Shown piece after piece: positions 2,920 through 26,159 of a DNA stretch of 64,000 nt (positions are counted from its first letter, which is position 1; the number at the start of each line of letters is the position of its first letter). The stretch covers positions 248,001-312,000 of the forward strand of contig CDROCS010002546.1 in assembly GCA_977020255.1 (NCBI GenBank), written 5' to 3'. Under the pieces are notes generated by a model, which had not been told where the DNA came from, did not search any database, and saw nothing but the letters and a program-made list of their open reading frames with translations. The position numbers and the translations under genes are program-made. Origin of the DNA: Obrimoposthia wandeli (taxonomy: Eukaryota).

Positions 2920-5140
2920 TTTACACTTCTTCAGCCATTCGATTCTCCTGGGAAGTATTCCTCTTGGAAACTGAATTGATACTTTTCGTGGACTCATGAA
3001 TTCTATTATTATGAATGGGCCTTCATACTGGTCACTATCCTTGCTTCTTTTAATTGGGTCCTTTTTAACAAGCACCTTTTCATTAACTTCAAATATCCTT
3101 TCCTCTCTTCTTTCATTGTCTAACTTCTTTAACTTTTCAGCTGCGATTTGTTGATTTTTCCTTACGTCTTGAATGATATTTTCTTTATTGTTTGTTGTTG
3201 TATTTTATGCTTGAATTGTTATTTTTTTTCCACAAATGACCTCAAACGGTGAATGTTTTGAAGAACTATTTACTGTTGGATTTATAGCAAATACAATTTG
3301 TGGCAATAAATCGTGCCAACATTTTCCTGTTTTAGTAGACGCCATTGTCGTTACAATCATATCTCTTACCGTGCGTAAAACTCTTTCTGCTAGACCGTTA
3401 GCTTGGTGTTGATAAGGTGCTGTAAGCTCTTCTTCAATACCAAATTTTCCTAGCCAATTCTGAAAATAATTTCCAGTAAATATTCGTCATCTATCTGTTA
3501 AAATACTCTTAGGTTTTCACAAATTTGTATATCCAATTTGTCTCGAGAGCTTTAGGAATTTTTATTTCATATTCTTTCGAGGTTGCTGATAGTGATACCA
3601 GTTTGCTAAATCGATCGATTACTATCAACATATATTTATCTTTAGATCTTCCTTCCTTCATGTGGGCTATATCGACAACTATTTGATCTAAAAAAATTTC
3701 TTTGATTTTAGGAATATATACTTCTTTTGTTCTGCTTGTTTCAATTTTTCTTTTGGCACAGAAAACGCACTTTGACATACATTATTTTATTTCTTGAAAA
3801 ATTCCTTTAAAATAAAAATTATCTTACATATAGTTATAAACGTTTTGTATTCCTAAATGACTAAGATAATTTCATTAGCGTTCTTAGGAGGTATGACAAA
3901 TAAATCTGTAAAATTTTGTTTTAAAAATAAAGGATATCATCGCAGAGTTTAAGTTTCTCTCTTATTTGATAAATCTAACTTATTTTGCATTCTTCCGATA
4001 AATCCTTAATTTCTAATTGGAGAAATTATTTCATTTCTTTCACATGAATATCTTCTTGTTGTATTTTCCTTATCTTACTGAAGAAGTTGTCTTTGTTTAG
4101 TGAGTTAATATATCGTATTTTAGATATCTACTCTTGTGCATCTATATGTTTAGTTTCAAACTGAGCACATACTGTTTCATTTAATCTTGACTTACCATCG
4201 GCATTACCATGGTCAATACCTTTACGATGTTCTAACTTAAAATTAAATTCTGATAAATTTTCCAGCCATGTTCGAAATTGAAGACTGATTGGTTTTTTCG
4301 TCGTTCTTAAAAATACTAATGCTTTATGATCTGTTCTTGCCAAAAATTCTGTTCCATATAAATATTGTTTGAAATGTATAATAAACTCGTATACTGCTAA
4401 AAGTTCTTTTCTGGTAATACAATATCCTTTATCATGGGAAGTCAGATGTTTTGAAGCGTATGAAATCACTTTTTCGTTTCTCATTTCATCCAGTTGGCTC
4501 AATTCTGCCGATTCGCACCAAAGCGAGCGTCTGTATCATTATAAATTTTATATTTCACTTGGGAAAATCTAATATGAAATATGTTGTTAATCTTTCTGTA
4601 GGGAGTGCAAAACTTGGTTTACAATCCGGTGACCATTGTATTGAATTCTTATCTTCGGACCCCACTGCATATAGTGGAGCTGCCATATTTACATAATCTT
4701 TAATAAATTGTCAATAATAGTTTGCCATTCCTAAAAATGATTTTAGTTTTTTGCTACAATCTGGTTCTTTGAAATTTATAATTTAATTGAATTTCGACTG
4801 ATTTGTATGTATTCCGCTTTCTGTTATGGTATGACCTAGGAATTTTAACTGTTTCTGGCCAATGTAGCATTTATTAGGGTTTATTTTGAGGCCTGTCGCT
4901 GAAATTCTTTTGAATACCTATCTTAATAATGTATAACGTTCTTCTTGGGTGTTACTATAAACAAGGATATCATCCAAATATACAATTGTTCCATTGAACA
5001 ACAAACCATCCAATATGTTATGCATCAAACCCAAATGGCAAGCGATTGAAACAAAATAGTCTCAATTTTGTACCGAAAGGCGTTTTAGCCTGAGACTCAT
5101 TCTCTAGATGTACCTGGAAATAAGCTTGTCCAATATCTAA
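2920..5140 (-). mobile_element. Ty3/gypsy LTR-retrotransposon pol relic (RT-RNase H-integrase)
   Basis: Minus-strand translation gives RT IVYLDDILVYS and LKFLGH, RNase H YCITRKELLAV...TDHKAL, Zn-finger CVFC, and integrase TAPYQHQANGLAER...SPFEV. The domain order is gypsy-type. Multiple stops and frameshifts. Confidence 0.9.
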
Positions 5141-5434
5141 TGTCTAGTGTAAAGGTATCAAGAGGTATCAACACCTATTTTCGTTTATTTGAGAAAGTAC
5201 ACTTTACACTACTTCATTAGCTGCGCAGTGATTACAGGCGATGTTACAGCGTCCCGAGAACCATTTACTAGAGTGGAAAAATAAAGTTATGTGATGTCCA
5301 CAGCAAACAATATTGTTTTTTCTTCGTGAATGGCCGGTTTCCCTATTTGAATGTGTGTACCATTGTTAGGACTCACAGTAGTATTTTATTTTATAAAATA
5401 AGGTCAACATCTTCTATTGAACGGCCTTACGCAC

Positions 5435-5946
5435 CTGATCGCCAGTGTCAGTGTCGACGATGTGCAGAGGGAAGTCGATATTGAGCTCGTCACTGCTGAG
5501 CTCAAAGGAGCGGACGCATTGTTGCAGGTGGAGCTTATCATCTGCCGGTTGCTTCCCCAAAGCTTCCCTTACAGACGGCTCGATAGGAAAGGGCTGCTGT
5601 TGCTGGTGCAGGTGAACGAGGATGAGTGCTGCGCCATGCGGGTTTGGAGCGAGAGACGACGACCGAACTTCCGCACACATAGTGCCCCATCTCGCACCAG
5701 CAGCAGCACCATCAACACCAGCACCAGACACCATCTTACCACGATCTCCAAAGTCAGGTACATGTTCTTGCTGACATTTAGAGCCTCATCCAGTTTGCTC
5801 TCCCACTGCAAACTGGTCTTCACCCATTCTTCCACAACCACTGGACTCTGTGAGCTCTCATCGCCACTGTCGCTCGACTCTACCAACAGCTGAGACGTTG
5901 ACATTTCTTCTTCAATCGAATAACACAAGATGTGTTGGTAACGGTC
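5435..5946 (-). pseudogene. Diverged, frameshifted paralog of the tandem-array coding module
   Basis: Shares ESKL...RRLSLQTR and ALILVHLHQQ..PIEPSVR...DELNIDF...DQVRK with the array module. One frameshift lies near 5635. The acceptor-like TTTTTTCAG| and donor-like CAG|GTGCGT are both phase 0. Confidence 0.8.
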
Positions 5947-6053: not shown

Positions 6054-7232
6054 CTCACATTTTTTATGTGTGGTTATCTAAATATATCGCAATGATTAAA
6101 TTGAATATATGTACCGTATTTATGACAATAATTTTAGTCTAATAATTACACACAGTAAGTATTTTAGTGTATAAGAATGCTCAGATCCTCTACAATACTC
6201 TTTCTTGCTGCCAGATGTGACTTAAAATCTTCGGCGGATCTGCGGCACAACAAAGAACTAGTCTCTCTAGTTCGTTCTTTGGCCATGGAGCCACCTAATC
6301 TTCACTTCAGGAGTTTTAAACATGTTTAAGTACGTTTAGACAATTGCTGCGGTACAGTCGAATCTTCACTTTTTATGGGGGTATTCATTATTAATAGACA
6401 ATACCTCTTTTATTCCAGATTTCACATCGATATCAAATTGAAAAATTCATATAAATTAACTCCTAATTCATTGAAATTAAATCATCTTAACCCAAATTTC
6501 ACACAGGTTTCAAATAAATTGACAAAAATCGATAATTTCACTTCATTAAAACGAAATTAATTAAATGTACGTTAAATTCATTCAAATTAACTCAACATAA
6601 CCTTAAATTTCACATTGATTTCAAATAAATTACTAAATTTTGATTTTAGTTCATTAAAACCAAATTCAATTAAAATTTTGTAACAAAATTCTGGACTTTT
6701 TAGAGCAATTTCCAGAAAAACGCATTTTAGTTTTAGATGAGTTTTGTTAAAACTGATGTTTTGGATTGTAGTTTATGCTTTAAAACCAAAAACTTTACTT
6801 CTCTTCCAGTCGTTTATGGATTGAGTTTTACACATAAATCTCTAGTAGCTTCTCTAATTGATAATTGAAGGATCTTGATGTTTCTAATGTGTCTTCTTTC
6901 TTCCTTGCGAGTCCTCTCACAATATTTTAAGATATTCATCGTATGTTAGAAGTGAATTAAGAATATATTTTACAGTAACTATATGTATATGCTTAATTTT
7001 ATCGATTTGGTATCGATTGTTTCCTTCGCCTTTTAGTGGACCATTTTTCGTAAGCAGAACTGGCGATGTTCGATGAATCAAACATTAAATAAATACTTTT
7101 CAATTAATACACTTCTTTTAATTTATTCAATTTTGTCAAATCTTTCTGCAAGAACATAATTCGATTATTAAAATAATATATATTAGATCAATTTAAAAAT
7201 TATATGAAATTTCAGACAATGTCCTTACGCAC

Positions 7233-7919
7233 CTGATCAACAGTGCCAGTGCCGATGTGGAAGTCGATATTGAGATCATCGCTGCTGAACTCGAAGGTGC
7301 GACCGGAGCGTTGCAGGTGGAGCCTGGCGTCTACTAGTTGCTGACTCGCAGCTACCCGTACAGACGGCTCGATAGGACAGTGCTGGTGTTGCTGATGCAG
7401 GTGCACGAGAATGAGTGCTGCCGCCGTGCGGGTCTGGAGCGAGAGACGACGGCCGCACTCCCGCATACAAAGCGCCACATCTCGCGCCAGTGGTGCAGCC
7501 ATCGATTCCGGCACCAGACCGCACCGCGTTGCGACCTCCACTGCCAGACACACGTTTTCACGAACCTGAGCAATGGCCCCCAGTTTACTCTCGCGCTGCA
7601 AACTGACTACCACATCCGCTTCCCCTGGCAACTGAGCCTTCACCGACTCTTGGCCAGTCAGATGCGACAGTACCTCACACAGCAGCGGTACCAAGTCTGG
7701 GATGTGCTCATGCACGTCTTTCATGCTGATCTCAGCGGATATGCTCGACTTCAGCTCGCACCAATGCTCACATAGCTGCATAACTCTGTTTGCCAAGCTC
7801 AGATCCTCTTCCACAATCTTTCCTGCTGCCAGATGTGACTTAAAATCTTCCAGGAATTTCTTCTGAGACCAGAAACATTGCAGCTTAACTGGAATAGCTT
7901 GGAGACGTGCTTCGTCGAT
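7233..7919 (-). CDS. Array module copy A, 229-codon helix-rich domain of unknown function (probable exon)
   Basis: GC-rich open frame within ORF 7212-7970, bounded by TTTCCAG|ATC and CAG|GTGCGT, both phase 0. Confidence 0.75.
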
Positions 7920-8440
7920 CTGGAAATTATATGTAGAATTTTTTATTTTGACTCCAAATACAGTCTTCATGTTTTAGTTTTTTTATTGCAGAAATACACG
8001 ATTATTATTAGTTATTCAAAGATTTTAAAAAATTATTATATAAAATATTATGAAGATTTCAAAATATTCATGTTATTTTTGAGTGAATCACTTTAAGTAA
8101 ATAACAAATGAAGCTTGTAATAAATAACAAATGAAGCTTGTAAAAAACTAAAAAACTTAAGGCTTTGTTGAACAAGTATCTTTATACAAAATAAGTAATA
8201 ATAAATCAATTTTGAAAATGTCTTGAAGCCAAATTCAAGAAACAAGAAAAGAACTTTTAAAAATAAAATGTATTAAAACATAATTATTATATCTAAAATA
8301 TTCAACATTCTTAAAATTCCAAATTCCAAATATAACCAAATAATATTAATTGAGGTTTATTCCGTTTTGTCTAAATATACAATTTATAAATAACTTTATA
8401 AATAAAGTTGTCAAATAAATTTGATACTGCTTAGTGATGC

Positions 8441-8605
8441 TAGTAGTAAAAAGTGACGATTCGGCGGATCTGCGGCACAACAAAGAACTAGTCTCTCTAG
8501 TTCGTTCTTTGGCCATGGAGCCACCTAATCTTCACTTCAGGAGTTTTAAACATGTTTAAGTACGTTTAGACAATTGCTGCGGTACAGTCGAATCTTCCGT
8601 TTTTA
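8441..8605. other. Fold-back element in each array unit (Polinton-terminus-like, or a structured ncRNA)
   Basis: AGTAGT-AAAAAGTGACGATTCGGC...GTCGAATCTTCACTTTTT, with inner hairpins GAACTAG/CTAGTTC and the palindrome TTAAACATGTTTAA. Other copies lie at ~10671-10833, 12897-13060, 15144-15307 and 17368-17531, plus a 5'-truncated copy at 6230-6375. Confidence 0.55.
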
Positions 8606-9461
8606 GGGGGTATTCATTATTAATAGACAATACCTCTTTTATTCCAGATTTCACATCGATATCAAATTGAAAAATTCATATAAATTAACTCCTAATTCAT
8701 CGAAAATAAATCATCTTAACCCAAATTTCACGCAGGTTTCAAATAAATTGACAAAAATCGATAATTTCACTTCATTAAAACGAAATTAATTAAATGTACG
8801 TTAAATTCATTCAAATTAACTCAACATAACCTTAAATTTCACAATGATTTCAAATAAATTACTAAATTTTGATTTTAGTTCATTAAAACCAAATTCAATT
8901 AAAATTTTGTAACAAAATTCTGGACTTTTAGAGCAATTTCCAAAAATACGCTTTTTTAGTTTTAGATGAATTTTGTTAAAACTGATGTTTTGGATTGTAG
9001 TTTAAGCTTTAAAACCAAAAACTTTACTTCTCTTCCAGTCGTTTATGGATTGAGTTTTACACATAAATCTCTAGTAGCTTCTCTAATTGATAATTGAAGG
9101 ATCTTGATGTTTCTAATGTGTCTTCTTTCTTCCTTGCGAGTTTTCTCACAATTTTTTAAGATATTCATCGTATGTTAGAAGTGAATTAAGAATATATTTT
9201 ACAGTAACTATATGTATATGCTTAATTTTATCGATTTGGTATCGATTGTTTCCTTTGCCTTTTAGTGGACCATTTTTCGTAAGCAGAACTGGCGATGTTC
9301 GATGAACCAAACATTAAATAAATATTTTTCAATGAATACACTTCTTTTAATTTATTCAATTTTGTCAAATCTTTCTGTAAGAACATAATTCGACTTTTCA
9401 AACAATATATATTAGATCAATTTAAAAATTATATGAAATTTCAGACAATGTCCTTACGCAC

Positions 9462-10148
9462 CTGATCAACAGTGCCAGTGCCGATGTGGAAGTCGATATT
9501 GAGATCATCGCTGCTGAACTCGAAGGTGCGACCGGAGCGTTGCAGGTGGAGCCTGGCGTCTACTAGTTGCTGACTCGCAGCTGCCCGTACAGACGGCTCG
9601 ATAGGACAGTGCTGGTGTTGCTGATGCAGGTGCACGAGAATGAGTGCTGCCGCCGTGCGAGTCTGGAGCGAGAGACGACGGCCGCACTCCCGCATACAAA
9701 GCGCCACATCTCGCGCCAGTGGTGCAGCCATCGATTCCGGCACCAGACCGCACCGCGTTGCGACCTCCACTGCCAGACACACGTTTTCACGAACCTGAGC
9801 AATGGCCCCAAGTTTGCTCTCGCGCTGCAAACTGACTTCCACATCCGCTTTCCCTGGCAACTGAGCCTTCACCGACTCTTGGCCAGTCATATGCGACAGT
9901 ACCTCACACAGCAGCGGCACCAAGTCTGGGATGTGCTTATGCACCTCTTTAATGCTGATCTCAGCGAATATGCTCGACTTCAGCTCGCACCAATGCTCAC
10001 ATAGCTGCATAACTCTATTTGCCAAGCTTAGATCCTCTTCCACAATCTTTCCTGCTGCCAGATGTGACTTAAAATCTTCCAGGAATTTCTGTTGAGACCA
10101 GAAACATTGCAGCTTAACTGGAATAGCTCGGAGACGTGCTTCGTCGAT
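9462..10148 (-). CDS. Array module copy B
   Basis: Intact frame and the same splice-like boundaries. It has the most private amino-acid changes of the six copies. Confidence 0.75.
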
Positions 10149-11690
10149 CTGGAAATTATATGTAGAATTTTTTATTTTGACTCCAAATACAGTCTTCATG
10201 TTTTAGTTTTTTTATTGCAGAAATACACGATTATTATTAGTTATTCAAAGATTTTAAAAAATTATTATATAAAATATTATGAAGATTTCAAAATATTCAT
10301 GTTATTTTTGAGTGAATCACTTTAAGTAAATAACAAATGAAGCTTGTAATAAATAACAAATGCAGCTTGTAAAAAAGTAAACAACTTAAGGCTTTGTTGA
10401 ACAAGTATCTTTATACAAAATAAGTAATAATAAATCAATTTTGAAAATGTCTTGAAGCCAAATTCAAGAAACAAGAAAAGAACATTTTAAAATAAAATGT
10501 ATTAAAACATAATTATTATATCTAAAATATTCAACATTCTTAAAATTCCAAATTCCAAATATAATCAAATAATATTAATTGAGGTTTATTCCGTTTTGTC
10601 TAAATATACAATTTATAAATAACTTTATAAATAAAGTTGTCAAATAAATTTGATACTGCTTAGTGTTGCTAGTAGTAAAAGTGACGATTCGGCGGATCTG
10701 CGGCACAACAAAGAACTAGTCTCTCTAGTTCGTTCTTTGGCCATGGAGCCACCTAATCTTCACTTCAGGAGTTTTAAACATGTTTAAGTACGTTTAGACA
10801 ATTGCCGCGGTACAGTCGAATCTTCACTTTTTATGGGGGTATTCATTATTAATAGACAATACCTCTTTTATTCAAGATTTCACATCGATATCAAATTGAA
10901 AAATTCATATAAATTAACTCCTAATTCATCGAAATTAAATCATCGTAACCCAAATTTCACACAGGTTTCAAATAAATTGACAAAAATCGATAATTTCACT
11001 TCATTAAAACGAAATTAATTAAATGTACTTTAAATTCATTCAAATTAACTCAACATAACCTTAAATTTCACATTGATTTCAAATAAATTACTAAATTTTG
11101 ATTTTAGTTCATTAAAACCAAATTCAATTAAAATTTTGTAACAAAATTCTGGACTTTTTAGAGCAATTTCCAGAAAAACGCATTTTAGTTTTAGATGAGT
11201 TTTGTTAAAACTGATGTTTTGGATTGTAGTTTATGCTTTAAAACCAAAAACTTTACTTCTCTTCCAGTCGTTTATGGATTGAGTTTTACACATAAATCTC
11301 TAGTAGCTTCTCTAATTGATAATTGAAGGATCTTGATGTTTCTAATGTGTCTTCTTTCTTCCTTGCGAGTCCTCTCACAATTTTTTAAGATATTCATCGT
11401 ATGTTAGAAGTGAATTAAGAATATATTTTACAGTAACTATATGTATATGCTTAATTTTATCGATTTGGTATCGATTGTTTCCTTCGCCTTTTAGTGGACC
11501 ATTTTTCGTAAGCAGAACTGGCGATGTTCGATGAACCAAACATTAAATAAATATTTTTCAATTAATACACTTCTTTTAATTTATTCAATTTTGTCAAATC
11601 TTTCTGCAAGAACATAATTCGATTATTAAAATAATATATATTAGATCAATTTAAAAATTATATGAAATTTCAGACAATGTCCTTACGCAC

Positions 11691-12374
11691 CTGATCAACA
11701 GTGCCAGTGCCGATGTGGAAGTCGATATTGAGATCATCGCTGCTGAACTCGAAGGTGCGACCGGAGCGTTGCAGGTGGAGCCTGGCGTCTACTAGTTGCT
11801 GACTCGCAGCTACCCGTACAGACGGCTCGATAGGACAGTGCTGGTGTTGCTGATGCAGGTGCACGAGAATGAGTGCTGCCGCCGTGCGGGTCTGGAGCGA
11901 GAGACGGCCGCACTCCCGCATACAAAGCGCCACATCTCGCGCCAGTGGTGCAGCCATCGATTCCGGCACCAGACCGCACCGCGTTGCGACCTCCACTGCC
12001 AGACACACGTTTTCACGAACCTGAGCAATGGCCCCAAGTTTGCTCTCGCGCTGCAAACTGACTTCCACATCCGCTTCCCCTGGCAACTGGGCCTTCACCG
12101 ACTCTTGGCCGGTCAGATGCGACAGTACCTCACACAGCAGCGGCACCAAGTCTGGGATGTGCTCATGCACGTCTTTCATGCTGATCTCAGCGAATATGCT
12201 CGACTTCAGCTCGCACCAATGCTCACATAGCTGCATAACTCTATTTGCCAAGCTTAGATCCTCTTCCACAATCTTTCCTGCTACCAGATGTGACTTAAAA
12301 TCTTCCAGGAATTTCTTCTGAGACCAGAAACATTGCAGCTTAACTGGAATAGCTTGGAGACACGCTTCGTCGAT
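11691..12374 (-). CDS. Array module copy C
   Basis: Intact frame with an in-frame 3-nt deletion (ECGRL instead of ECGRRL). Confidence 0.75.
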
Positions 12375-13917
12375 CTGGAAATTATATGTAGAATTTTTTA
12401 TTTTGACTCCAAATACAGTCTTCATGTTTTAGTTTTTTTATTGCAGAAATACACGATTATTATGAGTTATTCAAAGATTTTAAAAAATTATTATATAAAA
12501 TATTATGAAGATTTCAAAATATTCATGTTATTTTTGAGTGAATCACTTTAAGTAAATAACAAATGAAGCTTGTAATAAATAACAAATGAAGCTTGTAAAA
12601 AAGTAAAAAACTTAAGGCTTTGTTGAACAAGTATCTTTATACAAAATAAGTAATAATAAATCAATTTTGAAAATGTCTTGAAGCCAAATTCAAGAAACAA
12701 GAAAAGAACATTTTAAAATAAAATGTATTAAAACATAATTATTATATCTAAAATATTCAACATTCTTAAAATTCCAAATTCCAAATATAACCAAATAATA
12801 TTAATTGAGGTTTATTCCGTTTTGTCTAAATATACAATTTATAAATAACTTTATAAATAAAGTTGTCAAATAAATTTGATACTGCTTAGTGATGCTAGTA
12901 GTAAAAAGTGACGATTCGGCGGATCTGCGGCACAACAAAGAACTAGTCTCTCTAGTTCGTTCTTTGGCCATGGAGCCACCTAATCTTCACTTCAGGAGTT
13001 TTAAACATGTTTAAGTACGTTTAGACAATTGCCGCGGTACAGTCGAATCTTCACTTTTTATGGGGGTATTCATTATTAATAGACAATACCTCTTTTATTC
13101 AAGATTTCACATCGATATCAAATTGAAAAATTCATATAAATTAACTCCTAATTCATCGAAATTAAATCATCGTAACCCAAATTTCACACAGGTTTCAAAT
13201 AAATTGACAAAAATCGATAATTTCACTTCATTAAAACGAAATTAATTAAATGTACTTTAAATTCATTCAAATTAACTCAACATAACCTTAAATTTCACAT
13301 TGATTTCAAATAAATTACTAAATTTTGATTTTAGTTCATTAAAACCAAATTCAATTAAAATTTTGTAACAAAATTCTGGACTTTTTAGAGCAATTTCCAG
13401 AAAAACGCATTTTAGTTTTAGATGAGTTTTGTTAAAACTGATGTTTTGGATTGTAGTTTATGCTTTAAAACCAAAAACTTTACTTCTCTTCCAGTCGTTT
13501 ATGGATTGAGTTTTACACATAAATCTCTAGTAGCTTCTCTAATTGATAATTGAAGGATCTTGATGTTTCTAATGTGTCTTCTTTCTTCCTTGCGAGTTTT
13601 CTCACAATTTTTTAAGATATTCATCGTATGTTAGAAGTGAATTAAGAATATATTTTACAGTAACTATATGTATATGCTTAATTTTATCGATTTGGTATCG
13701 ATTGTTTCCTTCGCCTTTTAGTGGACCATTTTTCGTAAGCAGAACTGGCGATGTTCGATGAACCAAACATTAAATAAATATTTTTCAATTAATACACTTC
13801 TTTTAATTTATTCAATTTTGTCAAATCTTTCTGCAAGAACATAATTCGATTTTTAAAATAATATATATTAGATCAATTTAAAAATTATATGAAATTTCAG
13901 ACAATGTCCTTACGCAC

Positions 13918-14604
13918 CTGATCAACAGTGCCAGTGCCAATGTGGAAGTCGATATTGAGATCATCGCTGCTGAACTCGAAGGTGCGACCGGAGCGTTGCA
14001 GGTGGAGCCTGGCGTCTACTAGTTGCTGACTCGCAGCTACCCGTACAGACGGCTCGATAGGACAGTGCTGGTGTTGCTGATGCAGGTGCACGAGAATGAG
14101 TGCTGCCGCCGTGCGAGTCTGGAGCGAGAGACGACGGCCGCACTCCCGCATACAAAGCGCCACATCTCGCGCCAGTGGTGCAGCCATCGATTCCGGCACC
14201 AGACCGCACCGCGTTGCGACCTCCACTGCCAGACACACGTTTTCACGAACCTGAGCAATGGCCCCAAGTTTGCTCTCGCGCTGCAAACTGACTTCCACAT
14301 CCGCTTCCCCTGGCAACTGGGCCTTCACCGACTCTTGGCCGGTCAGATGCGACAGTACCTCACACAGCAGCGGCACCAAGTCTGGGATGTGCTCATGCAC
14401 GTCTTTCATGCTGATCTCAGCGAATATGCTCGACTTCAGCTCGCACCAATGCTCACATAGCTGCATAACTCTGTTTGCCAAGCTCAGATCCTCTTCCACA
14501 ATCTTTCCTGCTGCCAGATGTGACTTAAAATCTTCCAGGAATTTCTTCTGAGACCAGAAACATTGCAGCTTAACTGGAATAGCTTGTAGACGTGCTTCGT
14601 CGAT
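13918..14604 (-). CDS. Array module copy D
   Basis: Intact frame and the same boundaries. Confidence 0.75.
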
Positions 14605-16166
14605 CTGGAAATTATATGTAGAATTTTTTATTTTGACTCCAAATACAGTCTTCATGTTTTATTTTTTTATTGCAGAAATACACAATTATTATGAGTTATT
14701 CAAAGATTTTAAAAAATTATTATATAAAATATTATGAAGATTTCAAAATATTCATGTTATTTTTGAGTGAATCACTTTAAGTAAATAACAAATGAAGCTT
14801 GTAATAAATAACAAATGAAGCTTGTAATAAATAACAAATGAAGCTTGTAAAAAACTAAAAAAGGCTTTGTTGAACAAGTATCTTTATACAAAATAAGTAA
14901 TAATAAATCAATTTTGAAAATGTCTTGAAGCCAAATTCAAGAAACAAGAAAAGAACATTTTAAAATAAAATGTATTAAAACATAATTATTATATCTAAAA
15001 TATTCAACATTCTTAAAATTCCAAATTCCAAATATAACCAAATAATATTAATTGAGGTTTATTCCGTTTTGTCTAAATATACAATTTATAAATAACTTTA
15101 TAAATAAAGTTGTCAAATAAATTTGATACTGCTTAGTGATGCTAGTAGTAAAAAGTGACGATTCGGCGGATCTGCGGCACAACAAAGAACTAGTCTCTCT
15201 AGTTCGTTCTTTGGCCATGGAGCCACCTAATCTTCACTTCAGGAGTTTTAAACATGTTTAAGTACGTTTAGACAATTGCTGCGGTACAGTCGAATCTTCA
15301 CTTTTTATGGGGGTATTCATTATTAATAGACAATACCTCTTTTATTCCAGATTTCACATCGATATCAAATTGAAAAATTCATATAAATTAACTCCTAATT
15401 CATCGAAATTAAATCATCTTAACCCAAATTTCACACAGGTTTCAAATAAATTGACAAAAATCGATAATTTCACTTCATTAAAACGAAATTAATTAAATGT
15501 ACGTTAAATTCATTCAAATTAACTCAACATAACCTTAAATTTCACATTGATTTCAAATAAATTACTAAATTTTGATTTTTAGTTCATTAAAACCAAATTC
15601 AATTAAAATTTTGTAACAAAATTCTGGACTTTTTAGAGCAATTTCCAGAAAAACGCATTTTAGTTTTAGATGAGTTTTGTTAAAACTGATGTTTTTGGAT
15701 TGTAGTTTATGCTTTAAAACCAAAAACTTTACTTCTCTTCCAGTCGTTTATGGATTGAGTTTTACACATAAATCTCTAGTAGCTTCTCTAATTGATAATT
15801 GAAGGATCTTGATGTTTCTAATGTGTCTTCTTTCTTCCTTGCGAGTCCTCTCACAATTTTTTAAGATATTCATCGTATGTTAGAAGTGAATTAAGAATAT
15901 ATTTTACAGTAACTATATGTATATGCTTAATTTTATCGATTTGGTATCGATTGTTTCCTTCGCCTTTTAGTGGACCATTTTTCGTAAGCAGAACTGGCGA
16001 TGTTCGATGAATCAAACATTAAATAAATACTTTTCAATTAATACACTTCTTTTAATTTATTCAATTTTGTCAAATCTTTCTGCAAGAACATAATTCGATT
16101 ATTAAAATAATATATATTAGATCAATTTAAAAATTATATGAAATTTCAGACAATGTCCTTACGCAC

Positions 16167-16850
16167 CTGATCAACAGTGCCAGTGCCGATGTGGAAGTCG
16201 ATATTGAGATCATCGCTGCTGAACTCGAAGGTGCGACCGGAGCGTTGCAGGTGGAGCCTGGCGTCTACTAGTTGCTGACTCGCAGCTACCCGTACAGACG
16301 GCTCGATAGGACAGTGCTGGTGTTGCTGATGCAGGTGCACGAGAATGAGTGCTGCCGCCGTGCGGGTCTGGAGCGAGAGACGGCCGCACTCCCGCATACA
16401 AAGCGCCACATCTCGCGCCAGTGGTGCAGCCATCGATTCCGGCACCAGACCGCACCGCGTTGCGACCTCCACTGCCAGACACACGTTTTCACGAACCTGA
16501 GCAATGGCCCCCAGTTTACTCTCGCGCTGCAAACTGACTACCACATCCGCTTCCCCTGGCAACTGAGCCTTCACCGACTCTTGGCCAGTCAGATGCGACA
16601 GTACCTCACACAGCAGCGGTACCAAGTCTGGGATGTGCTCATGCACGTCTTTCATGCTGATCTCAGCGGATATGCTCGACTTCAGCTCGCACCAATGCTC
16701 ACATAGCTGCATAACTCTGTTTGCCAAGCTCAGATCCTCTTCCACAATCTTTCCTGCTGCCAGATGTGACTTAAAATCTTCCAGGAATTTCTTCTGAGAC
16801 CAAAAACATTGCAGCTTAACTGGAATAGCTTGGAGACAAGCTTCGTCGAT
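16167..16850 (-). CDS. Array module copy E
   Basis: Intact frame with the 3-nt deletion. The upstream ATG is mutated to ATT while TTTCCAG is kept. Confidence 0.75.
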
Positions 16851-18388
16851 CTGGAAATTATATGTAGAATTTTTTATTTTGACTCCAAATACAGTCTTAA
16901 TGTTTTAGTTTTTTTATTGCAGAAATACACGATTATTATGAGTTATTCAAAGATTTAAAAAAATTATTATATAAAATATTATGAAGATTTCAAAATATTC
17001 ATGTTATTTTTGAGTGAATCACTTTAAGTAAATAACAAATGAAGCTTGTAATAAATAACAAATGAAGCTTGTAAAAAACTAAAAAAGGCTTTGTTGAACA
17101 AGTATCTTTATACAAAATAAGTAATAATAAATCAATTTTGAAAATGTCTTGAAGCCAAATTCAAGAAACAAGAAAAGAACATTTTAAAATAAAATGTATT
17201 AAAACATAATTATTATATCTAAAATATTCAACATTCTTAAAATTCCAAATTCCAAATATAACCAAATAATATTAATTGAGGTTTATTCCGTTTTGTCTAA
17301 ATATACAATTTATAAATAACTTTATAAATAAAGTTGTCAAATAAATTTGATACTGCTTAGTGATGCTAGTAGTAAAAAGTGACGATTCGGCGGATCTGCG
17401 GCACAACAAAGAACTAGTCTCTCTAGTTCGTTCTTTGGCCATGGAGCCACCTAATCTTCACTTCAGGAGTTTTAAACATGTTTAAGTACGTTTAGACAAT
17501 TGCTGCGGTACAGTCGAATCTTCACTTTTTATGGGGGTATTCATTATTAATAGACAATACCTCTTTTATTCCAGATTTCACATCGATATCAAATTGAAAA
17601 ATTCATATAAATTAACTCCTAATTCATCGAAATTAAATCATCTTAACCCAAATTTCACACAGGTTTCAAATAAATTGACAAAAATCGATAATTTCACTTC
17701 ATTAAAACGAAATTAATTAAATGTACGTTAAATTCATTCAAATTAACTCAACATAACCTTAAATTTCACATTGATTTCAAATAAATTACTAAATTTTGAT
17801 TTTAGTTCATTAAAACCAAATTCAATTAAAATTTTGTAACAAAATTCTGGACTTTTTAGAGCAATTTCCAGAAAAACGCATTTTAGTTTTAGATGAGTTT
17901 TGTTAAAACTGATGTTTTGGATTGTAGTTTATGCTTTAAAACCAAAAACTTTACTTCTCTTCCAGTCGTTTATGGATTGAGTTTTACACATAAATCTCTA
18001 GTAGCTTCTCTAATTGATAATTGAAGGATCTTGATGTTTCTAATGTGTCTTCTTTCTTCCTTGCGAGTCCTCTCACAATTTTTTAAGATATTCATCGTAT
18101 GTTAGAAGTGAATTAAGAATATATTTTACAGTAACTATATGTATATGCTTAATTTTATCGATTTGGTATCGATTGTTTCCTTCGCCTTTTAGTGGACCAT
18201 TTTTCGTAAGCAGAACTGGCGATGTTCGATGAATCAAACATTAAATAAATACTTTTCAATTAATACACTTCTTTTAATTTATTCAATTTTGTCAAATCTT
18301 TCTGCAAGAACATAATTCGATTATTAAAATAATATATATTAGATCAATTTAAAAATTATATGAAATTTCAGACAATGTCCTTACGCAC

Positions 18389-19075
18389 CTGATCAACAGT
18401 GCCAGTGCCGATGTGGAAGTCGATATTGAGATCATCGCTGCTGAACTCGAAGGTGCGACCGGAGCGTTGCAGGTGGAGCCTGGCGTCTACTAGTTGCTGA
18501 CTCGCAGCTACCCGTACAGACGGCTCGATAGGACAGTGCTGGTGTTGCTGATGCAGGTGCACGAGAATGAGTGCTGCCGCCGTGCGGGTCTGGAGCGAGA
18601 GACGACGGCCGCACTCCCGCATACAAAGCGCCACATCTCGCGCCAGTGGTGCAGCCATCGATTCCGGCACCAGACCCCACCGCGTTGCGACCTCCACTGC
18701 CAGACACACGTTTTCACGAACCTGAGCAATGGCCCCCAGTTTGCTCTCGCGCTGCAAACTGACTTCCACATCCGCTTCCCCTGGCAACTGGGCCTTCACC
18801 GACTCTTGGCCGGTCAGATGCGACAGTACCTCACACAGCAGCGGCACCAAGTCTGGGATGTGCTCATGCACGTCTTTCATGCTGATCTCAGCGAATATGC
18901 TCGACTTCAGCTCGCACCAATGCTCACATAGCTGCATAACTCTGTTTGCCAAGCTCAGATCCTCTTCCACAATCTTTCCTGCTGCCAGATGTGACCTAAA
19001 ATCTTCCAGGAATTTCTTCTGAGACCAGAAACATTGCAGCTTAACTGGAATAGCTTGGAGACGTGCTTCGTCGAT
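18389..19075 (-). CDS. Array module copy F (array edge)
   Basis: Intact frame. Sequence upstream of the acceptor diverges from the other copies (MNETILALE versus MKTVFGV). Confidence 0.75.
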
Positions 19076-20062
19076 CTGGAAATGATATGTAGAATTTTTT
19101 ATTTCGAGCGCTAGTATAGTTTCATTCAATAGTTATTTATGTTGCAGAAATACAATTTTTATGTCTGAAAAATCCGATTTATAAGCATTACTAAAACCTT
19201 AGAAAATGTTTTTATTTAGAAAAGTAGAAAATGGAAATTTATGGTATTAAAATATTTCCTTCTTAATATTACTAAAACTATTTAGTTAAACATAGTGAGT
19301 GAATTTAGTATTATTTTCATCTACTTAGATTCATGCTTTTTTGAACAGTTTCAAATTTAAATCCCTTCAATTTAGGTCTTAAACCGAACTTGCTTGCATA
19401 ATTTCTTGAAGATTTCATTTCTAGTTGGAAGTGTAAACTGTAAGTTTACACTTCTGTCGAGAGATGCTCGCTGAAGAAAAAAGATTGTCCCCAAAACGTG
19501 ATTTTTCGCCTTTTACGGTGTGATAAAGAGCTCCAAAGACGTCATCTTTGGAGAGAGATGTATTTTTCAGGTCCCGAAACGTTTGAAAAAGAAGTCAATT
19601 TTTGAAAAAATATGTAGGTCATACACTTGATGACCTTCATTTTGAAAAACGATTAGCGACACCCTTTTTTTATCAATGTTTTGGAGACGCTTCTTAAAAA
19701 TATTGCCCCTATATGTTTTCAGATGTTTCATATACTTCTTTATTTGACCTATATTTAGAAATTAGTCCGATTTTCAGTACCCTCTATGTTGCGCCTTTTC
19801 ATCGGTTGAAGTTATTTCATTTTATCTTATTAAAGTTTAACTGTGTAGAAGAAAGAAAAATTTACAACGTATTAGAATTAAATTTCTGGCTATTGCGTAT
19901 TGGCTGAGAAATCATTGTTTTTGAAATACTTTTTAAAAAAGGCTTAAAAGGGGAAATTTAGGGCCATCTGATTTCACTTTGCTTCATTAGCAAGAAATGC
20001 TTGATTTATATATATATATATATATATATTATTCATATATATTCATATTCATTTTTACATAT

Positions 20063-20185
20063 TTTTCACACCCCACCACCTTTTAAAGCCAAATATTTTT
20101 TCACACACCATCACCTTTTCAAGCCAAAATTTAATTTCACACCCAACCACCTTTTGAAGCTAAAATATAATTTTACACCCCACCG
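20063..20185. repeat. ~36-bp tandem repeat (about 3.5 copies) next to a (TA)n microsatellite
   Basis: Units of the form CACCCCACCACCTTTTAAAGCCAAATATTTTTTCA. (TA)n lies at ~20007-20029. Confidence 0.8.
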
Positions 20186-20489
20186 CATCGTAAATTTACT
20201 TTAAAACGAAAAGTGGTCATCGTAAATTTTCTTTAAATATAAAAACAGGTTTACACTTCCATTTTGCCAAAGGCTCTACTAGTTGGAATAAACAAAAATT
20301 AACAGGATAAAGAGACTTGTTTTCAAATAAATAATTACTTCAGCAAAATAGAAACAAAAAGAGTGGAAAAATAACAAAATATTATGTTGTCGTCGTTTTA
20401 AATATACTTTAAAGCTACAATTTACTGATTAAGCTTAATTTATTACATATGCCGTACATATTGCTGTGAGTTCATGATCTCAATATCAC

Positions 20490-21137
20490 CTCATGGAGCT
20501 TCTTATCGATGTCAGCTCGGGAGAGACCATCCTCTCCGGTCTGCTTGAGGTGGTCCATGAGACGCAGGTACTCGTTCCTGTCGATGATCCTTTTTTTACG
20601 CCGGTCTAACTGTAGAGAGTCAGAAAAGTAGACGCTCACACAGACGAGAGCACTGAGGTCACGAGCTCGAGCCGACAGTTTTAGCTCGTAGCATCGGTAC
20701 AGCTGGGTTGTCATCTCCGGCGTGAGCGCGGTCCACAACGATACACGATACAGCACGGTCACCAGATGCTCCACCAGCTCTATGAAGAGGTGGTGATCCT
20801 CTTGGGGATGGTTCAATATACTGGCCAGCACCATGTACACGTACTGAGACCTGGTCACAAATTGGAGCAAGTCAGTCTTGTACACCACGAGGATGTCAGA
20901 TAGAAGGTGCAAGAAGCTGATGAAGAAGTTGCGCTGCTCCAGGTCTATGGCGGGAAATTCCAACAGCCAACCCACCATTTCCTTGAACACACCAACTGAT
21001 ATTAACCGGTCCAGTTCAAGCTCATTCAGTCGATCTATGCCCACTTCTGATATAGCGCATCTTATCGCGTCACATATCCGGATTTTATCTTCTTTATCGG
21101 TTACTTTGGGGAGATGATTCATTAATCCATTTAATAC
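20490..21137 (-). CDS. Diverged helix-rich (ARM/HEAT-like) module, probable exon
   Basis: ORF 20472-21143 has GC-rich codons, with ATGCAG|GTA and GAG|GTGATA at phase 0. Its motif LSARARDLSALVCVSV matches LSLQTRTAAALILVHL in the array module. Confidence 0.7.
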
Positions 21138-22480
21138 CTGCATGAATGGTTAACCTTCACTACTGGACAAGTATTCAAAATGTACATTATATGGAGTAAA
21201 GTCCTTGGACTCATATAAAGATAAAAGGGATACAAAGCTAGAAGAAACATGCTGTCTATAGATGTTGAAGTAAAAGTTTAAGGATAAAAAGGTTTAGATT
21301 GTAAATAGTACATACTTTTCGAGAGTATTGATTTACCCATAGATTGTTTGTATTGGCTAGAATATATTGTACACTAGTAAAACAATTGAATGTAGAGGTT
21401 TAAAATGTTATCTATTTTTTGTTTACTAAATTCTTTTTGTTAATAACCAATAAGGAACAATCAATGAAAATCAAATAATGTAAATAAATTGATAAGTAAA
21501 TTTCAGAAATTAAAATAATTAATGTAATAGAAGAGGACATTAGAAACAATCAAGTTTACTTTTCATTATTATTTAAATTGAGATTATCAATGCGACTCAA
21601 TGGTGAACAAAAGTATCTAACGTCTGAAAAAACTTGATTGATGAAACCCCCGAAAACTGATTAAGTTTCTCGAAAATGTATTCAATAAGAAGCATCCAAA
21701 TGGACAAAGAAGCATAACGTATCGAATTCTTGTGCTGCAAGCGATGGTTGACTTCAGATGTTCTGCGTTGTAATCATATATCACACGACAATTTCTCACA
21801 AGAAATATGTTGACTGTGCATCCAAAATCGTGGAAATTCTTCAAATACACCTGGAACCCCATTTTCAAAACCGGGTGTTCAAATTCTGACACTCCGATAT
21901 GAATAGACAATTGGAAATACAGCGTTCAATTCAACCGATGTCAACGAGGTTCCCACAAAGACAACTGTAAAGTATATCTTCATAGGCCATTATAATACCA
22001 TACAAAATGCAACTCTTTTTATGTCTGAGTAGAACAACGGCGCTATAAAGGCGGGAAAATGCGATATTTACTATACAATGGTTTTATTTTACTTTGGTAG
22101 TTTAATCTCAGCTTATGTATATATTCAGATAACTGCACTCGCGTAGAATCCGCAATTTCATTTCTCTCCCATAAAGCCACAGTTAACCCGCGGCATATAC
22201 GGAAGGTTTTAAGGTACTTTATTATAAATGTTTGGGTACAGATCTCTATATTTTAAGCTTTTACAAACTTCCACACACCAAAGAGGATAACTTCATAATT
22301 ATCTATAAACATTGATTCAAAAATGAATTATTATAAAAAAAAATCCCATTCAAAAAAGCCAATCAAATTGACTGTTTAAAATTTAAATGCAAAATACATT
22401 ATGAAAGCTTAGAAACATTCCAGGGCTGTAAATGACAATATCAGACAAATTGTATGGTGCCTTTTAAAACTGGAACTTAC

Positions 22481-22840
22481 TCCACTTATTTCTTGAATTA
22501 CTTCGACATCTGGAATTTGCTCACACTTTTGTCGATAATATTCCAAGAAGGTCTCCAATTTCGTAAATAATTCTTCTCGTGAGGGAGTGTACATAAGAGC
22601 CGCGCAGTGAGCTCTCGTGGCTATAGGCAATTCTTTCATTTTGGCAATCCTCCAGAAAAGAATTGGAAACTTCTGGGCCAGCTGCTGCATTCCTGATTGC
22701 GCCTGCACCGGATAATCAATGTTTACAGATTCATCCACATCACTCGACCAGGGTATAAGAGAGACAAGCTCGAAAGCAGTTTGTCCAGAAGAAACAACAT
22801 CGGTGAAGACAGAACCATCTTTATGTAAAGAACCGACAAC
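22481..22840 (-). CDS. Diverged module, probable exon
   Basis: Frame is open from 22840 to 22409 and contains LPIATRAHCAALMY. A strong donor GGA|GTAAGT lies at 22481. The 5' boundary is uncertain. Confidence 0.55.
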
Positions 22841-22965
22841 TCACAAAATACAATAGCAATATCATAGACAGTCGACCAGTTTTAATGGAGATAAATTTGA
22901 TTCTTCATAATAAATCATGTTTTGAAGGGGTTCTTAACATTTATCTGCATTCCCTAAAGTTACAA

Positions 22966-23157
22966 TTATGGATATATAAAGTATAACCATATTTGTGTAC
23001 TCTTTTGATACTTTCTCAATTTAGATGGCCTTGTAATATTTGCAGAAGTCAAGATCTTGTCGTTTGACTGCTTACTTATCGTACTTTCCGTTGTTGGATT
23101 AACAGCAGCATTATCCCTACAACCAATCAGTTCGTTTCTTATTAACCATTTTTCCAT
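22966..23157 (-). mobile_element. Possible hAT (Charlie/SPIN-like) transposase N-terminal relic
   Basis: MEKWL...RPSKLRKYQKS resembles the starts of these transposases. The match is short and weak. Confidence 0.3.
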
Positions 23158-23639
23158 ATTTAAAAGTCTAAAGTCTAAATTAAATTCTGATCTACAATGA
23201 CATCAACTTTGAAACCTTCATTTAAAGATTTTATTTCTTTCAGGTATACTCATGAAGGATGATTGAGAAAAATATCCATCCAGTGTTTATTCCTGGAGAC
23301 TCGATAAACAACTACCTTAGTGTGAGATGGAAATAACTTTTAAAATTTTATTTTTAAGGAACAATCAGTTTCAAATCTATGAACATGCAACTCTTGATAA
23401 AATACTTCTTATTTCTAGGTCGAGGCTAAGGAGATGGGAAAGGAAAAAATGCAACGATTCAGCTTCAACCAACACGAAAGGTTCAAACCAAGTCTACATT
23501 ACCAGATCAAAGTATGACGACTTAATGCTCCTAAAGCTATTTTTACCCAACGAATATCAATATTTTATGAAGAATCCCTGGTCTGGTTAAAGAGTATGCT
23601 TAAATCTAACTGGAAGTCAGTGCTTCTATTTTCAAAAGG

Positions 23640-24117
23640 TGGCAAATAAAGGTCCATGTCGCATATGCCTGCATATAGAGGAGGTTAATTGTTTGATCTT
23701 AGGCTCAATGGGTGGGCAAACATCGGACAAATCTGCTTGTTTCAGCTATGTTTGATGAGCACCAACCTGCTTGCTGGTGAGGACGTGCACAGCGCGCTCG
23801 AGATGGATGCTGTGTCGAGTCGTGTTGTGATCTGTAATCGACTCCAGCACAGTGAGGCCAGATTCCACTGCTGTGCACAGACGCTCCAAGAAGTCCAGAT
23901 TCAGCTCCAGAGTCTTGTCGAGCTCGACACAGATAAAGTTGAGGTCCTGCTCGAGAGATTTGTGTCTTTCCTCGGAGCTGCAGCTACACTGACTATAATC
24001 TCCCGCCAGGTGCAGTCTGTCAACAACCGTTTGGAACCTTACATCTTCTTCTTCTTTTGCTTCTTTTGGTGCTTCATTTGACTCGTAGGAAGTCTCTTTT
24101 GCACTACTGGACTTAAT
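23640..24117 (-). pseudogene. Diverged module with in-frame TAG (not in the ORF track because it has no start codon)
   Basis: After CTTTAG| it reads IKSSSAKETSYESNEAPKEAKEEEDVRFQ...LCTAVESGLTVLES..., hits TAG at 23746-23748, then continues ...VCPPIEPKIK. CxAVE..GL.ES and PIEP echo the array module. Confidence 0.6.
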
Positions 24118-25584: not shown

Positions 25585-26159
25585 CTCGTCTAAGAAAGCG
25601 ATTACTTTTCGTCGAAATGATTTATCAACTATGTTGCAACAGTTCTTCCCATCTTGCAGCAAAAACCTTTTTATTTCATCGCTAGGAATTTCCGGTATAT
25701 ATATCAGCAATAAGCCTGCAAAAGTCTTTATTTCAAAAGTGAAATTGGGACTTTCATAGATTGATGCGAGGCTGCTGTGCCATGATTTACCAAACCTTTT
25801 CGAGTCTGTTAATGCTATGTACCTGAGCACAACATGAAGGACCATACTAAGCGCCTCCTGGTAAATAGAGATCTCTTTGGTATCCGAGAATCTACGGATA
25901 ATTTCCAAGAACAAAGGCAGAACGGTTGCATATTCAAATAATTGTACAAATATCTGTTGTTCCAAGTTTAAAAGACGTTTGAAAAATATTAAAGTATCTT
26001 CTCCACCAGACGATAAACGCAGCCCCTTCAATGTAAGTACAAAATGATTTATGACATCATTCTTTATAGAATAACTTTTTGACAGACCCTGCAATACTTA
26101 AAGAGTTATGAAATCTCAAATTTACTTTAGAGGCGTGACACGGCATACCGGCTTGATCC
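25585..26159 (-). CDS. Diverged module with an upstream 34-nt mini-exon and a 37-nt intron
   Basis: The mini-exon 26126-26159 (DQAGMPCHASK) and the GT-AG intron 26089-26125 join in frame to exon 25585-26088. Donor is GAG|GTATGT; motif is FTFEIKTFAGLLLIYI. Confidence 0.65.

What the first reader, a model, noticed from the sequence alone, without database searches (positions are those of the whole stretch)
7233..19075. Six near-identical phase-0/phase-0 cassettes: a repeated-exon array rather than six simple genes?
Seen: each 684-687-nt GC-rich block is bounded by TTTCCAG| and CAG|GTGCGT in phase 0, right where composition turns AT-rich. The apparent start ATG is lost in copy E and replaced in copy F, but the acceptor is invariant. 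The only indel inside the blocks is an in-frame 3-nt deletion, while the spacers have 1-nt and 23-nt indels. Inference: the blocks are under frame selection and could splice serially into a giant repeat protein, or be used as mutually exclusive alternatives (Dscam-like). A tandem gene family with short upstream exons remains possible.
Basis: partly seen in the sequence, partly recalled or inferred. Interest (0 to 1): 0.75.

Follow-up and report, generated by a model that had tools for sequence, protein, structure and literature searches.

The report
Tandemly amplified coding exon array
Six near-identical 2.2-kb repeats each carry a copy of one coding exon, with its splice sites, from an unknown multi-exon gene of an AT-rich eukaryote; this is an ordinary kind of exon amplification, and whether the extra copies enter the mRNA could not be tested.

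Summary
There are six 684-687-nt GC-rich blocks (55% GC in ~25% GC DNA). Each runs from TTTCCAG| to CAG|GTGCGT in phase 0, inside 2.2-kb tandem units that are 96-100% identical.

The blocks are exon-derived, not six simple genes:
- Four more phase-0 coding exons lie upstream on the same strand. One has no Met at all.
- The last of these, exon d, ends GAG|GTGATA in phase 0 and is followed by a cassette at three loci.
- Cassettes in that native position have no in-frame ATG.
- The ATG of the inner units lies in 74 nt of duplicated intron, where a 1-nt shift put it in frame.

The units were joined at a TGTAT microhomology. The spacer also forms its own 1.25-kb array elsewhere.

Array copies show fewer amino-acid changes than neutral expectation and only in-frame indels. 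Solitary copies elsewhere look neutral.

A Dscam-like role is unlikely, because the copies are nearly identical and no docking complementarity was found. Serial in-frame inclusion (like LPA KIV-2), stand-alone ORFs and unused young duplicates all remain open.

No RNA data were available. The protein has no detectable relatives. This is a new member of a known kind, of modest interest.

The parts
18389..19075 (-). Cassette F, 687 nt. It is the first copy, in native position behind exon d. The original intron lies upstream and there is no in-frame ATG (the ATG is 50 nt upstream, out of frame, followed by TAG).
16167..16850 (-). Cassette E, 684 nt. It carries a 3-nt in-frame deletion, and its leader ATG is mutated to ATT.
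13918..14604 (-). Cassette D, 687 nt. It lies in a 252-aa ORF at 13897-14655.
11691..12374 (-). Cassette C, 684 nt. It has the same 3-nt deletion as E.
9462..10148 (-). Cassette B, 687 nt.
7233..7919 (-). Cassette A, 687 nt. It is the last intact copy.
7920..7970 (-). The 51-nt AT-rich leader of an inner unit (shown for A; the same in B-E). It derives from the last 74 nt of the original intron. A remodelled 35-nt stretch with a 1-nt length change puts an ATG in frame and removes the TAG.
7212..7232 (-). The 21 nt after the GT (GTGCGTAAGGACATTGTCTGA). This is either the intron start or the C-terminal VRKDIV plus stop, if the exon is terminal.
7104..7145 (-). Candidate 42-nt mini-exon behind a candidate 87-nt intron (7146-7232). 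It is doubtful: GC is 19%, its stop codon varies among copies (TAA/TCA/GAA), and its acceptor is deleted in the C4928 copy.
10281..11527 (-). The 1247-bp spacer module (unit positions 898-2144, shown for the C-to-B spacer). It forms a cassette-free tandem array of its own at C2546:156000-163000. It holds a 110-bp internal repeat and dispersed-repeat fragments.
5435..5946 (-). Decayed seventh cassette G, 76-79% identical in nucleotides. It has its own acceptor ttttttcag|GAC in phase 0 and an identical GATCAG|GTGCGTAAGG. A 1-nt deletion shifts the frame. A Gypsy-like retroelement follows.
6179..6232 (-). A 54-nt fragment of the cassette 5' part (about 90% identical). It marks the broken distal edge of the array.
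20490..21137 (-). Exon d, 648 nt, bounded atgcag|GTA ... GAG|gtgata, phase 0 at both ends. A cassette follows it at the window, C593 and C1285.
22481..22840 (-). Exon c. The donor is GGA|gtaagt in phase 0. The acceptor is not resolved.
23767..24117 (-). Exon b, 351 nt, bounded tttag|ATT ... CAG|gttggt, phase 0 at both ends. It has no Met codon, so it can only be an internal exon.
25585..26088 (-). Exon a, 504 nt, bounded attgcag|GGT ... GAG|gtatgt, phase 0 at both ends.
19430..20335 (.). A repeat insertion of about 900 bp with very high copy number, in the intron between exon d and cassette F. It is absent at the C593 paralogue.

Best explanation
The array is a tandem segmental amplification of one coding exon of an orphan, probably all-helical, multi-exon gene on the minus strand of an unidentified AT-rich eukaryote.

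Shown:
- Each 2.2-kb unit holds the last 74 nt of the intron that precedes the exon (a complete 3' splice site), the 684-687-nt phase-0/phase-0 exon with its GT, and about 1.45 kb of downstream DNA.
- Units were joined at a TGTAT microhomology.
- The downstream DNA is satellite-like. It also forms a cassette-free 1.25-kb array elsewhere on the same contig.
- Copy F sits in the native position behind exon d, whose donor GAG|GTGATA is phase-compatible.

Inferred:
- Exon d is spliced to F.
- The five inner copies keep acceptor, frame and donor, so they can be included in frame. Purifying selection on the array copies, together with neutral decay of solitary ectopic units, favours their use as exons of this gene over use as autonomous genes. 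The likeliest form is a variable number of serially included 229-aa modules, as in LPA KIV-2.

The expression mode itself is not shown.
For: Structure:
- Six TTTCCAG| and six CAG|GTGCGT sites were found, with blocks of 684/687 nt in phase 0.
- Upstream exons a, b and d all have AG|...|GT boundaries in phase 0. For exon c only the phase-0 donor is resolved. Exon b has no Met.
- Codon-position GC of the cassette matches exons b and d.

Linkage to the upstream gene:
- In the whole assembly, exons b, c and d occur only next to cassettes: at the window and C593, and decayed at C1285 and C2609.
- Native-position cassettes (winF, C593a, C1285, C463) share the upstream intron and lack an in-frame ATG.
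- C593 and C1285 continue past ...CGTGTAT into unique DNA, which places the unit junction at TGTAT, 74 nt before the exon.
- A spacer-only 1247-bp array exists.

Selection:
- Across the six window copies there are 14 N: 14 S variants, against a neutral expectation of 19.7: 8.4 (P=0.02). Window plus C5827 gives 23:26 (P=0.0004).
- Group-confined variants in the array plus C5827 are 8N:13S (P=0.002). Ectopic solitary copies plus C593a are 30N:12S, which is near neutral. Fisher P=0.015.
- ORF indels are only 3 or 9 nt, while the flanks hold many non-3n indels.
- Ectopic units have no upstream exons within 10 kb.
Against: - No transcript evidence of any kind exists.
- Each unit also has a stop 21 nt past the GT and an AATAAA at +105, so the exon could be the terminal one, leaving the inner copies beyond the poly(A) site. 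Exon d shows the same two features, however, so they are weak evidence in 25% GC DNA.
- Inner units A-D have an in-frame ATG with A at -3.
- The two-unit ectopic locus C5827 also shows few nonsynonymous changes (3N:7S), which does not fit strict dependence on context.
- Selection counts are small, and gene conversion can import pre-filtered variants.
- No intact unique exon is seen downstream of the array, only the frameshifted copy G.
- The paralogous locus C593 looks as if it is degenerating: exon d has dN/dS 0.78, C593a is near neutral, and C593b is frameshifted.
Confidence: 0.6

Rival explanations
1. Tandem family of stand-alone short genes. Each inner unit would be transcribed from its own promoter in the spacer. 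It would be translated from the junction-born ATG (MKTVFGVKIKNSTYNFQ...) through the apparent donor to the TGA, giving a 252-aa protein. The splice-like motifs would be relics of the exon's origin.
For: - ORFs of 251-252 aa with ATG and TGA are present in A-D, and 10 of 12 inner-type copies genome-wide keep the ATG.
- A localized cluster of changes plus a 1-nt shift turned an out-of-frame ATG followed by TAG into an open in-frame start.
- AATAAA lies 105 nt after the GT.
- Units exist at loci without upstream exons and keep the frame.
- C5827 shows 3N:7S.
Against: - E and F lack an in-frame ATG yet are otherwise intact.
- Solitary ectopic units with the same flanks evolve neutrally, at 18N:7S.
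- The leader is 25% GC intron-derived sequence.
- No promoter evidence exists.
Confidence: 0.2
2. Only cassette F is used, as the last coding exon of the upstream gene and ending ...DQVRKDIV*. Copies E-A would be young, unexpressed by-products of satellite-type unequal crossing-over that have not yet had time to decay.
For: - The units are 96-100% identical, so the array is young.
- The spacer amplifies without the exon elsewhere, so amplification is driven by the repeat and not by the exon.
- Copy G, C593b, C1285 and C463 show that copies do decay.
- The stop lies at the same codon after the GT in G and in A-F.
- Substitution density in the ORF is no lower than in the flanks.
Against: - Nonsynonymous variants are deficient in the array (P=0.02, and 0.0004 with C5827).
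- There are no frameshifting indels in the cassettes against about 9 in equal-sized flanks of the same copies.
- The array contrasts with the neutral pattern of ectopic copies (Fisher P=0.015).
Confidence: 0.25
3. Dscam-like mutually exclusive cassette cluster, or alternative 3' ends, with one of the six copies chosen per transcript.
For: There are six same-phase, same-length exons in a row behind constant exons.
Against: - The copies differ by only 1-9 residues out of 229, so a choice among them would create almost no diversity.
- The longest complementarity between the d-F intron and the inter-cassette intron is 10 nt, below the shuffled mean of 11.2.
- The array is young and copy-variable between paralogous loci, with 6 copies here and 2 at C593.
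Confidence: 0.07
4. Spliced-leader trans-splicing. The invariant acceptor of each unit would receive a leader, which in some phyla donates the AUG. This would release one mRNA per unit from a long primary transcript.
For: It would explain intact copies without an ATG (E and F) and the phase-0 acceptor. This is only an inference from general knowledge of SL trans-splicing in several animal phyla.
Against: - The organism is not identified.
- No SL RNA or other Rfam family is present in 4000-28000.
- No reads were available to show leader sequences.
Confidence: 0.05

Closest known systems
LPA kringle IV-2 coding copy-number repeat (human apolipoprotein(a)); from my own knowledge
   Same: It is a kb-scale tandem unit that contains whole coding exon(s) with their splice sites. 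The phases are symmetric, so any copy number keeps the frame. Copies are near-identical, and copy number differs between loci or alleles.
   Different: In LPA the unit has two exons and is flanked by unique exons on both sides, and multi-copy mRNAs are documented. Here the unit has one exon, only a decayed copy lies downstream, each unit also carries a possible stop and poly(A) signal, and no transcript is known.
Dscam / other mutually exclusive exon clusters; from my own knowledge
   Same: Both have a row of same-length, same-phase alternative exons behind constant exons.
   Different: Dscam variants are strongly diverged and are chosen through docking/selector RNA pairing. Here the copies are 96-99.6% identical and no such pairing was found.
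ORF-bearing macrosatellites (D4Z4/DUX4, RS447/USP17, TSPY arrays); from my own knowledge
   Same: Both have 2-5-kb tandem units, each holding an open reading frame, with satellite-like spread of units to other loci and decayed edge copies.
   Different: Those units derive from whole (often retroposed) genes with their own start. Here the ORF is one exon of a larger gene. The ATG lies in duplicated intron sequence and is missing in 2 of the 6 copies.
Partial-gene tandem duplication that creates new start codons (exon-to-gene birth); from my own knowledge
   Same: A duplicated 3' gene segment acquired an in-frame ATG from formerly intronic sequence.
   Different: Use of that ATG is not shown, and solitary copies that carry it evolve neutrally.

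Membership tests
Mutually exclusive exon cluster (Dscam type) | Tandem alternative exons of equal phase and similar length inside one gene | tested here: met
   There are six 684/687-nt phase-0/0 blocks behind exons a-d.
Mutually exclusive exon cluster (Dscam type) | Variants differ enough to give distinct isoforms | tested here: not met
   Protein identity among copies is 96-99.6%.
Mutually exclusive exon cluster (Dscam type) | Docking/selector complementary intron elements | tested here: not met
   The longest complementarity is 10 nt. The shuffled mean is 11.2, and 98 of 100 shuffles reach 10 nt.
Mutually exclusive exon cluster (Dscam type) | Exactly one variant per mRNA | not testable with these tools
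   No RNA run holds the locus, and the runs laid are DNA.
In-frame coding exon copy-number repeat (LPA KIV-2 type) | Tandem kb-scale unit containing complete exon(s) with both splice sites | tested here: met
   Each unit holds 74 nt of intron with the acceptor, the exon, and GTGCGT.
In-frame coding exon copy-number repeat (LPA KIV-2 type) | Symmetric phase, so any copy number keeps the frame | tested here: met
   Lengths are 684/687 nt with phase 0 at both ends, and the exon d donor is also phase 0.
In-frame coding exon copy-number repeat (LPA KIV-2 type) | Array embedded between unique exons of a transcribed gene | tested here: inconclusive
   Unique exons a-d lie upstream. Downstream there is only the frameshifted copy G and then a retroelement.
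In-frame coding exon copy-number repeat (LPA KIV-2 type) | mRNA contains several copies in series | not testable with these tools
   No RNA data were available.
ORF-bearing macrosatellite / tandem gene family | Every unit holds a complete ORF with its own start and stop | tested here: not met
   A-D qualify. E has ATG changed to ATT, and F has no in-frame ATG.
ORF-bearing macrosatellite / tandem gene family | Units function autonomously (constraint on solitary copies) | tested here: not met
   Ectopic solitary copies show 18N:7S, which is close to neutral. Counts are small, and C5827 is an exception at 3N:7S.
HEAT/ARM alpha-solenoid proteins | Match to a HEAT/ARM family model or fold | tested here: not met
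   Pfam best hits are below cut-off (HEAT_ECM29 at 13 bits against a cut-off of 27). The ESM-atlas neighbours are solenoid families, but recognition is low. The AF2 model is all-helical with pLDDT 42.7, too poor for fold search.

The most novel reading that the evidence does not exclude
The gene makes mRNAs in which exon d is followed by up to six serially spliced, near-identical 229-aa helical modules. This would give a copy-number-variable repeat protein whose size differs between loci or alleles (6 cassettes here, 2 at C593). It would be caught at a very early stage, when the exon array is still being homogenised by a hitch-hiking satellite.
Probability: 0.3. Interest if true: 0.55.

Novelty: new member of a known kind. 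Interest (0 to 1): 0.35.

Why it matters
If the copies are spliced in series, this would be a young, clean example of how repeat proteins grow by whole-exon amplification. The driver would be a neighbouring satellite rather than selection on the exon. The ancestral one-copy locus (C1285), a two-copy locus (C593) and a six-copy locus are all preserved in one genome. It also shows duplicated intron sequence acquiring an in-frame ATG, which is a possible route from exon to new gene. If the inner copies are unused, it is an ordinary segmental amplification. The protein itself has no detectable relatives, so no function can be attached.

Tried and rejected
**RNA evidence**
- The look-up of sequencing runs found no RNA run.
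- The four holders, X1-X4, are DNA contigs. Their depth is even over spacers and single-copy DNA, and they show no splice-type joints.

**Homology**
- The cassette found nothing in the word search (the length filter applies), in 1.84 billion representatives, in the PDB, in Pfam, in PHROGs or in metagenome contigs.
- Exon d was blank in the word search, the PDB, Pfam and PHROGs.
- Exons a-c were blank in Pfam and PHROGs.
- The ESM-atlas lead to DUF3689 (TRPC4AP-like) was not supported. PF12463 matched nothing in the whole assembly, but that search also matched none of its control genomes, so it carries little weight.
- Exons were searched one by one by reference.

**Structure**
- The single-sequence AF2 model had pLDDT 42.7, so no fold search was run.

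**Other ideas tested**
- The cassette is not a repeat of exon d or exon a (BLASTP E=0.93 and 0.09).
- The 87-nt intron plus 42-nt mini-exon idea is considered doubtful. The mini-exon is 19% GC, its stop varies among copies, and its acceptor is deleted in one copy.
- No Rfam family or tRNA lies in the array, so it is not an RNA-gene array.
- The bacterial promoter scan is irrelevant for a eukaryote.
- The plus-strand 144-145-aa ORFs are shadows of the GC-rich minus-strand frame (codon-position variation).

**Organism identity**
- Not obtained. The assembly is a pool with many bacterial contigs.
Full report
**What is there**

The window is G000:C2546:248001-312000, from an assembly that is a pool of bacterial and eukaryotic contigs. 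This contig is eukaryotic and AT-rich, at about 30% GC. It carries retroelement and Polinton-like fragments.

Between about 6.2 and 19.2 kb lie six head-to-tail units with a period of 2222-2249 bp, 96-100% identical to one another. The coding strand is the minus strand. Each unit has an open frame of 251-253 codons. Within it sits a 684- or 687-nt GC-rich core that starts right after TTTCCAG and ends at CAG before GTGCGT, in phase 0 at both ends.

The composition step sits at the acceptor. The 51 nt between the apparent ATG and the AG are 25.5% GC, and the core is 55.5% GC. The codon-position GC profile of the core (0.67/0.39/0.60) is the same as in neighbouring exons b and d. Copy E has ATG changed to ATT. 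Copy F has only an out-of-frame ATG followed by TAG.

**The cassette is an exon of a larger gene**

Upstream on the same strand lie further GC-rich open blocks with AG|...|GT borders in phase 0:
- exon a at 26088-25585
- exon b at 24117-23767
- exon c ending at 22481
- exon d at 21137-20490

Exon b has no methionine at all, so it can only be an internal exon. Exon d ends GAG|GTGATA in phase 0, which matches the phase-0 acceptor of cassette F.

In the whole assembly, exons b, c and d occur only at three or four places, always beside cassettes. These are the window, C593 (two cassettes), and in decayed form C1285 (one cassette) and C2609.

Cassettes in this native position (winF, C593a, C1285, C463) share at least 130 nt of upstream intron and have no in-frame ATG. 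At C593 and C1285 the last spacer runs past ...CGTGTAT into unique DNA. In the inner units, the same TGTAT is followed by the last 74 nt of the native intron. The repeat unit is therefore 74 nt of intron with the 3' splice site, the exon, and about 1.45 kb of downstream DNA, joined at a TGTAT microhomology.

The ATG of the inner units lies inside those 74 nt. There a 35-nt stretch differs sharply from the native intron and is 1 nt longer, which puts the ATG in frame and removes a TAG.

**Why it amplified**

Positions 898-2144 of the unit form a cassette-free tandem array with a 1247-bp period about 85 kb away on the same contig. Pieces of the unit with different end points sit at five or more other loci. 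Parts of the spacer belong to dispersed repeats. This is satellite-type behaviour, and the exon appears to hitch-hike.

At the distal edge of the array lie a 54-nt cassette fragment and an older copy G (5946-5435). G is 76-79% identical and has its own phase-0 acceptor, an identical GATCAG|GTGCGTAAGG and a 1-nt frameshift. A Gypsy-like element follows it.

**Is the frame under selection?**

Across 13 full-length copies, variable sites fall 28/23/42 on codon positions 1/2/3, and mean dN/dS is 0.45.

I compared variants with a neutral expectation built from the observed mutation types:
- The six window copies show 14 N : 14 S (P=0.02).
- Window plus C5827 shows 23:26 (P=0.0004).
- All 13 copies show 61:38 (P=0.025), with no stop codon.

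Variants confined to one group split clearly. The array plus C5827 shows 8N:13S (P=0.002). The solitary ectopic copies plus C593a show 30N:12S, close to neutral. Fisher P is 0.015.

Inside the ORF, the only indels in any intact copy are 3 or 9 nt, whereas equal-sized flanks of the same copies hold many 1-, 2-, 5-, 7-, 8- and 23-nt indels.

Four caveats apply. The counts are small. AT-rich flanks are more indel-prone. Gene conversion may import variants that were already filtered by selection. C5827, an ectopic two-unit locus, also looks constrained.

**How the copies are used**

This could not be tested. No RNA run holds the locus.

Each unit has a TGA 21 nt after the GT and an AATAAA at +105. 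Exon d has the same two features (a stop after 5 codons and AATAAA at +45), so they are weak evidence in such AT-rich DNA.

A possible 87-nt intron plus 42-nt mini-exon after the GT looks unlikely. It is 19% GC, its stop is variable, and its acceptor is deleted in one copy.

A Dscam-like choice is disfavoured because the copies are almost identical and no docking-type complementarity exceeds chance.

On balance I favour use as in-frame exons of the upstream gene. Two points support this: the array is constrained while autonomous-looking solitary units are not, and intact copies exist without an ATG. Stand-alone ORFs and unused young duplicates remain serious rivals.

**What the protein is**

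It is unknown. The cassette and exons a-d gave no significant hit in Pfam, PHROGs or the PDB. The cassette also found nothing in 1.84 billion representative proteins or in metagenome contigs.

Language-model neighbours are alpha-solenoid families, at low recognition. A single-sequence AF2 model is all-helical but unreliable, with pLDDT 42.7. The cassette is not detectably related to exon d or exon a.

Exons were searched one by one by reference.

**Comparison and verdict**

The closest known kind is a coding exon copy-number repeat such as LPA KIV-2. It shares the kb-scale unit with complete exon and splice sites, and the symmetric phase. ORF-bearing macrosatellites such as D4Z4/DUX4 are the alternative model. 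These comparisons rest on my own knowledge, not on a tool result.

This is a new member of a known kind, in an unidentified organism. It has a well-resolved origin but an unresolved expression mode. Interest is modest.

Noticed in passing
G000:C2546:156000-163000 (locus L020), about 85 kb from the window on the same contig: There are at least six tandem copies of the 1247-bp spacer module alone (unit positions 898-2144), directly downstream of one solitary cassette unit. The cassette-free register seems to arise by deletion between two TTCAT microhomologies.
   Followed up: partly
window 19430-20335: A roughly 900-bp insert of a very high-copy repeat lies in the intron between exon d and cassette F. 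Word depth in the DNA runs is 10^4-10^6, against about 100 for single-copy DNA. The insert contains GGTGGGGTGTGAAAA-type sub-repeats. It is absent at C593, and a contig joining 19404 to 20279 is present at about half depth.
   Followed up: partly
window 21000-25950 versus G000:C593:39500-44300: About 5 kb, including introns, is 98-100% identical between the two loci. Exon d just beside it is only 88-98% identical (21 N : 8 S), and DNA beyond 26000 is 65-85% identical. This mosaic points to recent gene conversion or haplotype mixing.
   Followed up: partly
window 2911-5200, minus strand: A Gypsy/BEL-like retroelement pol (RT YLDD motif, RNase H, integrase) with several frame breaks lies directly downstream of the decayed cassette G.
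   Followed up: no
window 37275-37778 (+) and G000:C2546:167400-169200 (-): There are Polinton/Maverick-like protein-primed DNA polymerase B fragments.
   Followed up: no
whole assembly G000: The 'genome' is a pool. It holds dozens of bacterial-type COX1 genes without stops on multi-Mb contigs, several mitochondrial-type COX1 copies with 4-5 TGA codons, and several actin loci. Counts 'in the genome' may therefore mix organisms.
   Followed up: partly
window 26613-26100, minus strand: Possible further 5' exons of the same gene. One open block ends AAAG|gtaacc (phase 1). It is followed by a 35-nt candidate exon, ttttcag|GGATC...CTAAAG|gtaaat, that would restore phase 0 before exon a. The first exon was not found.
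   Followed up: no
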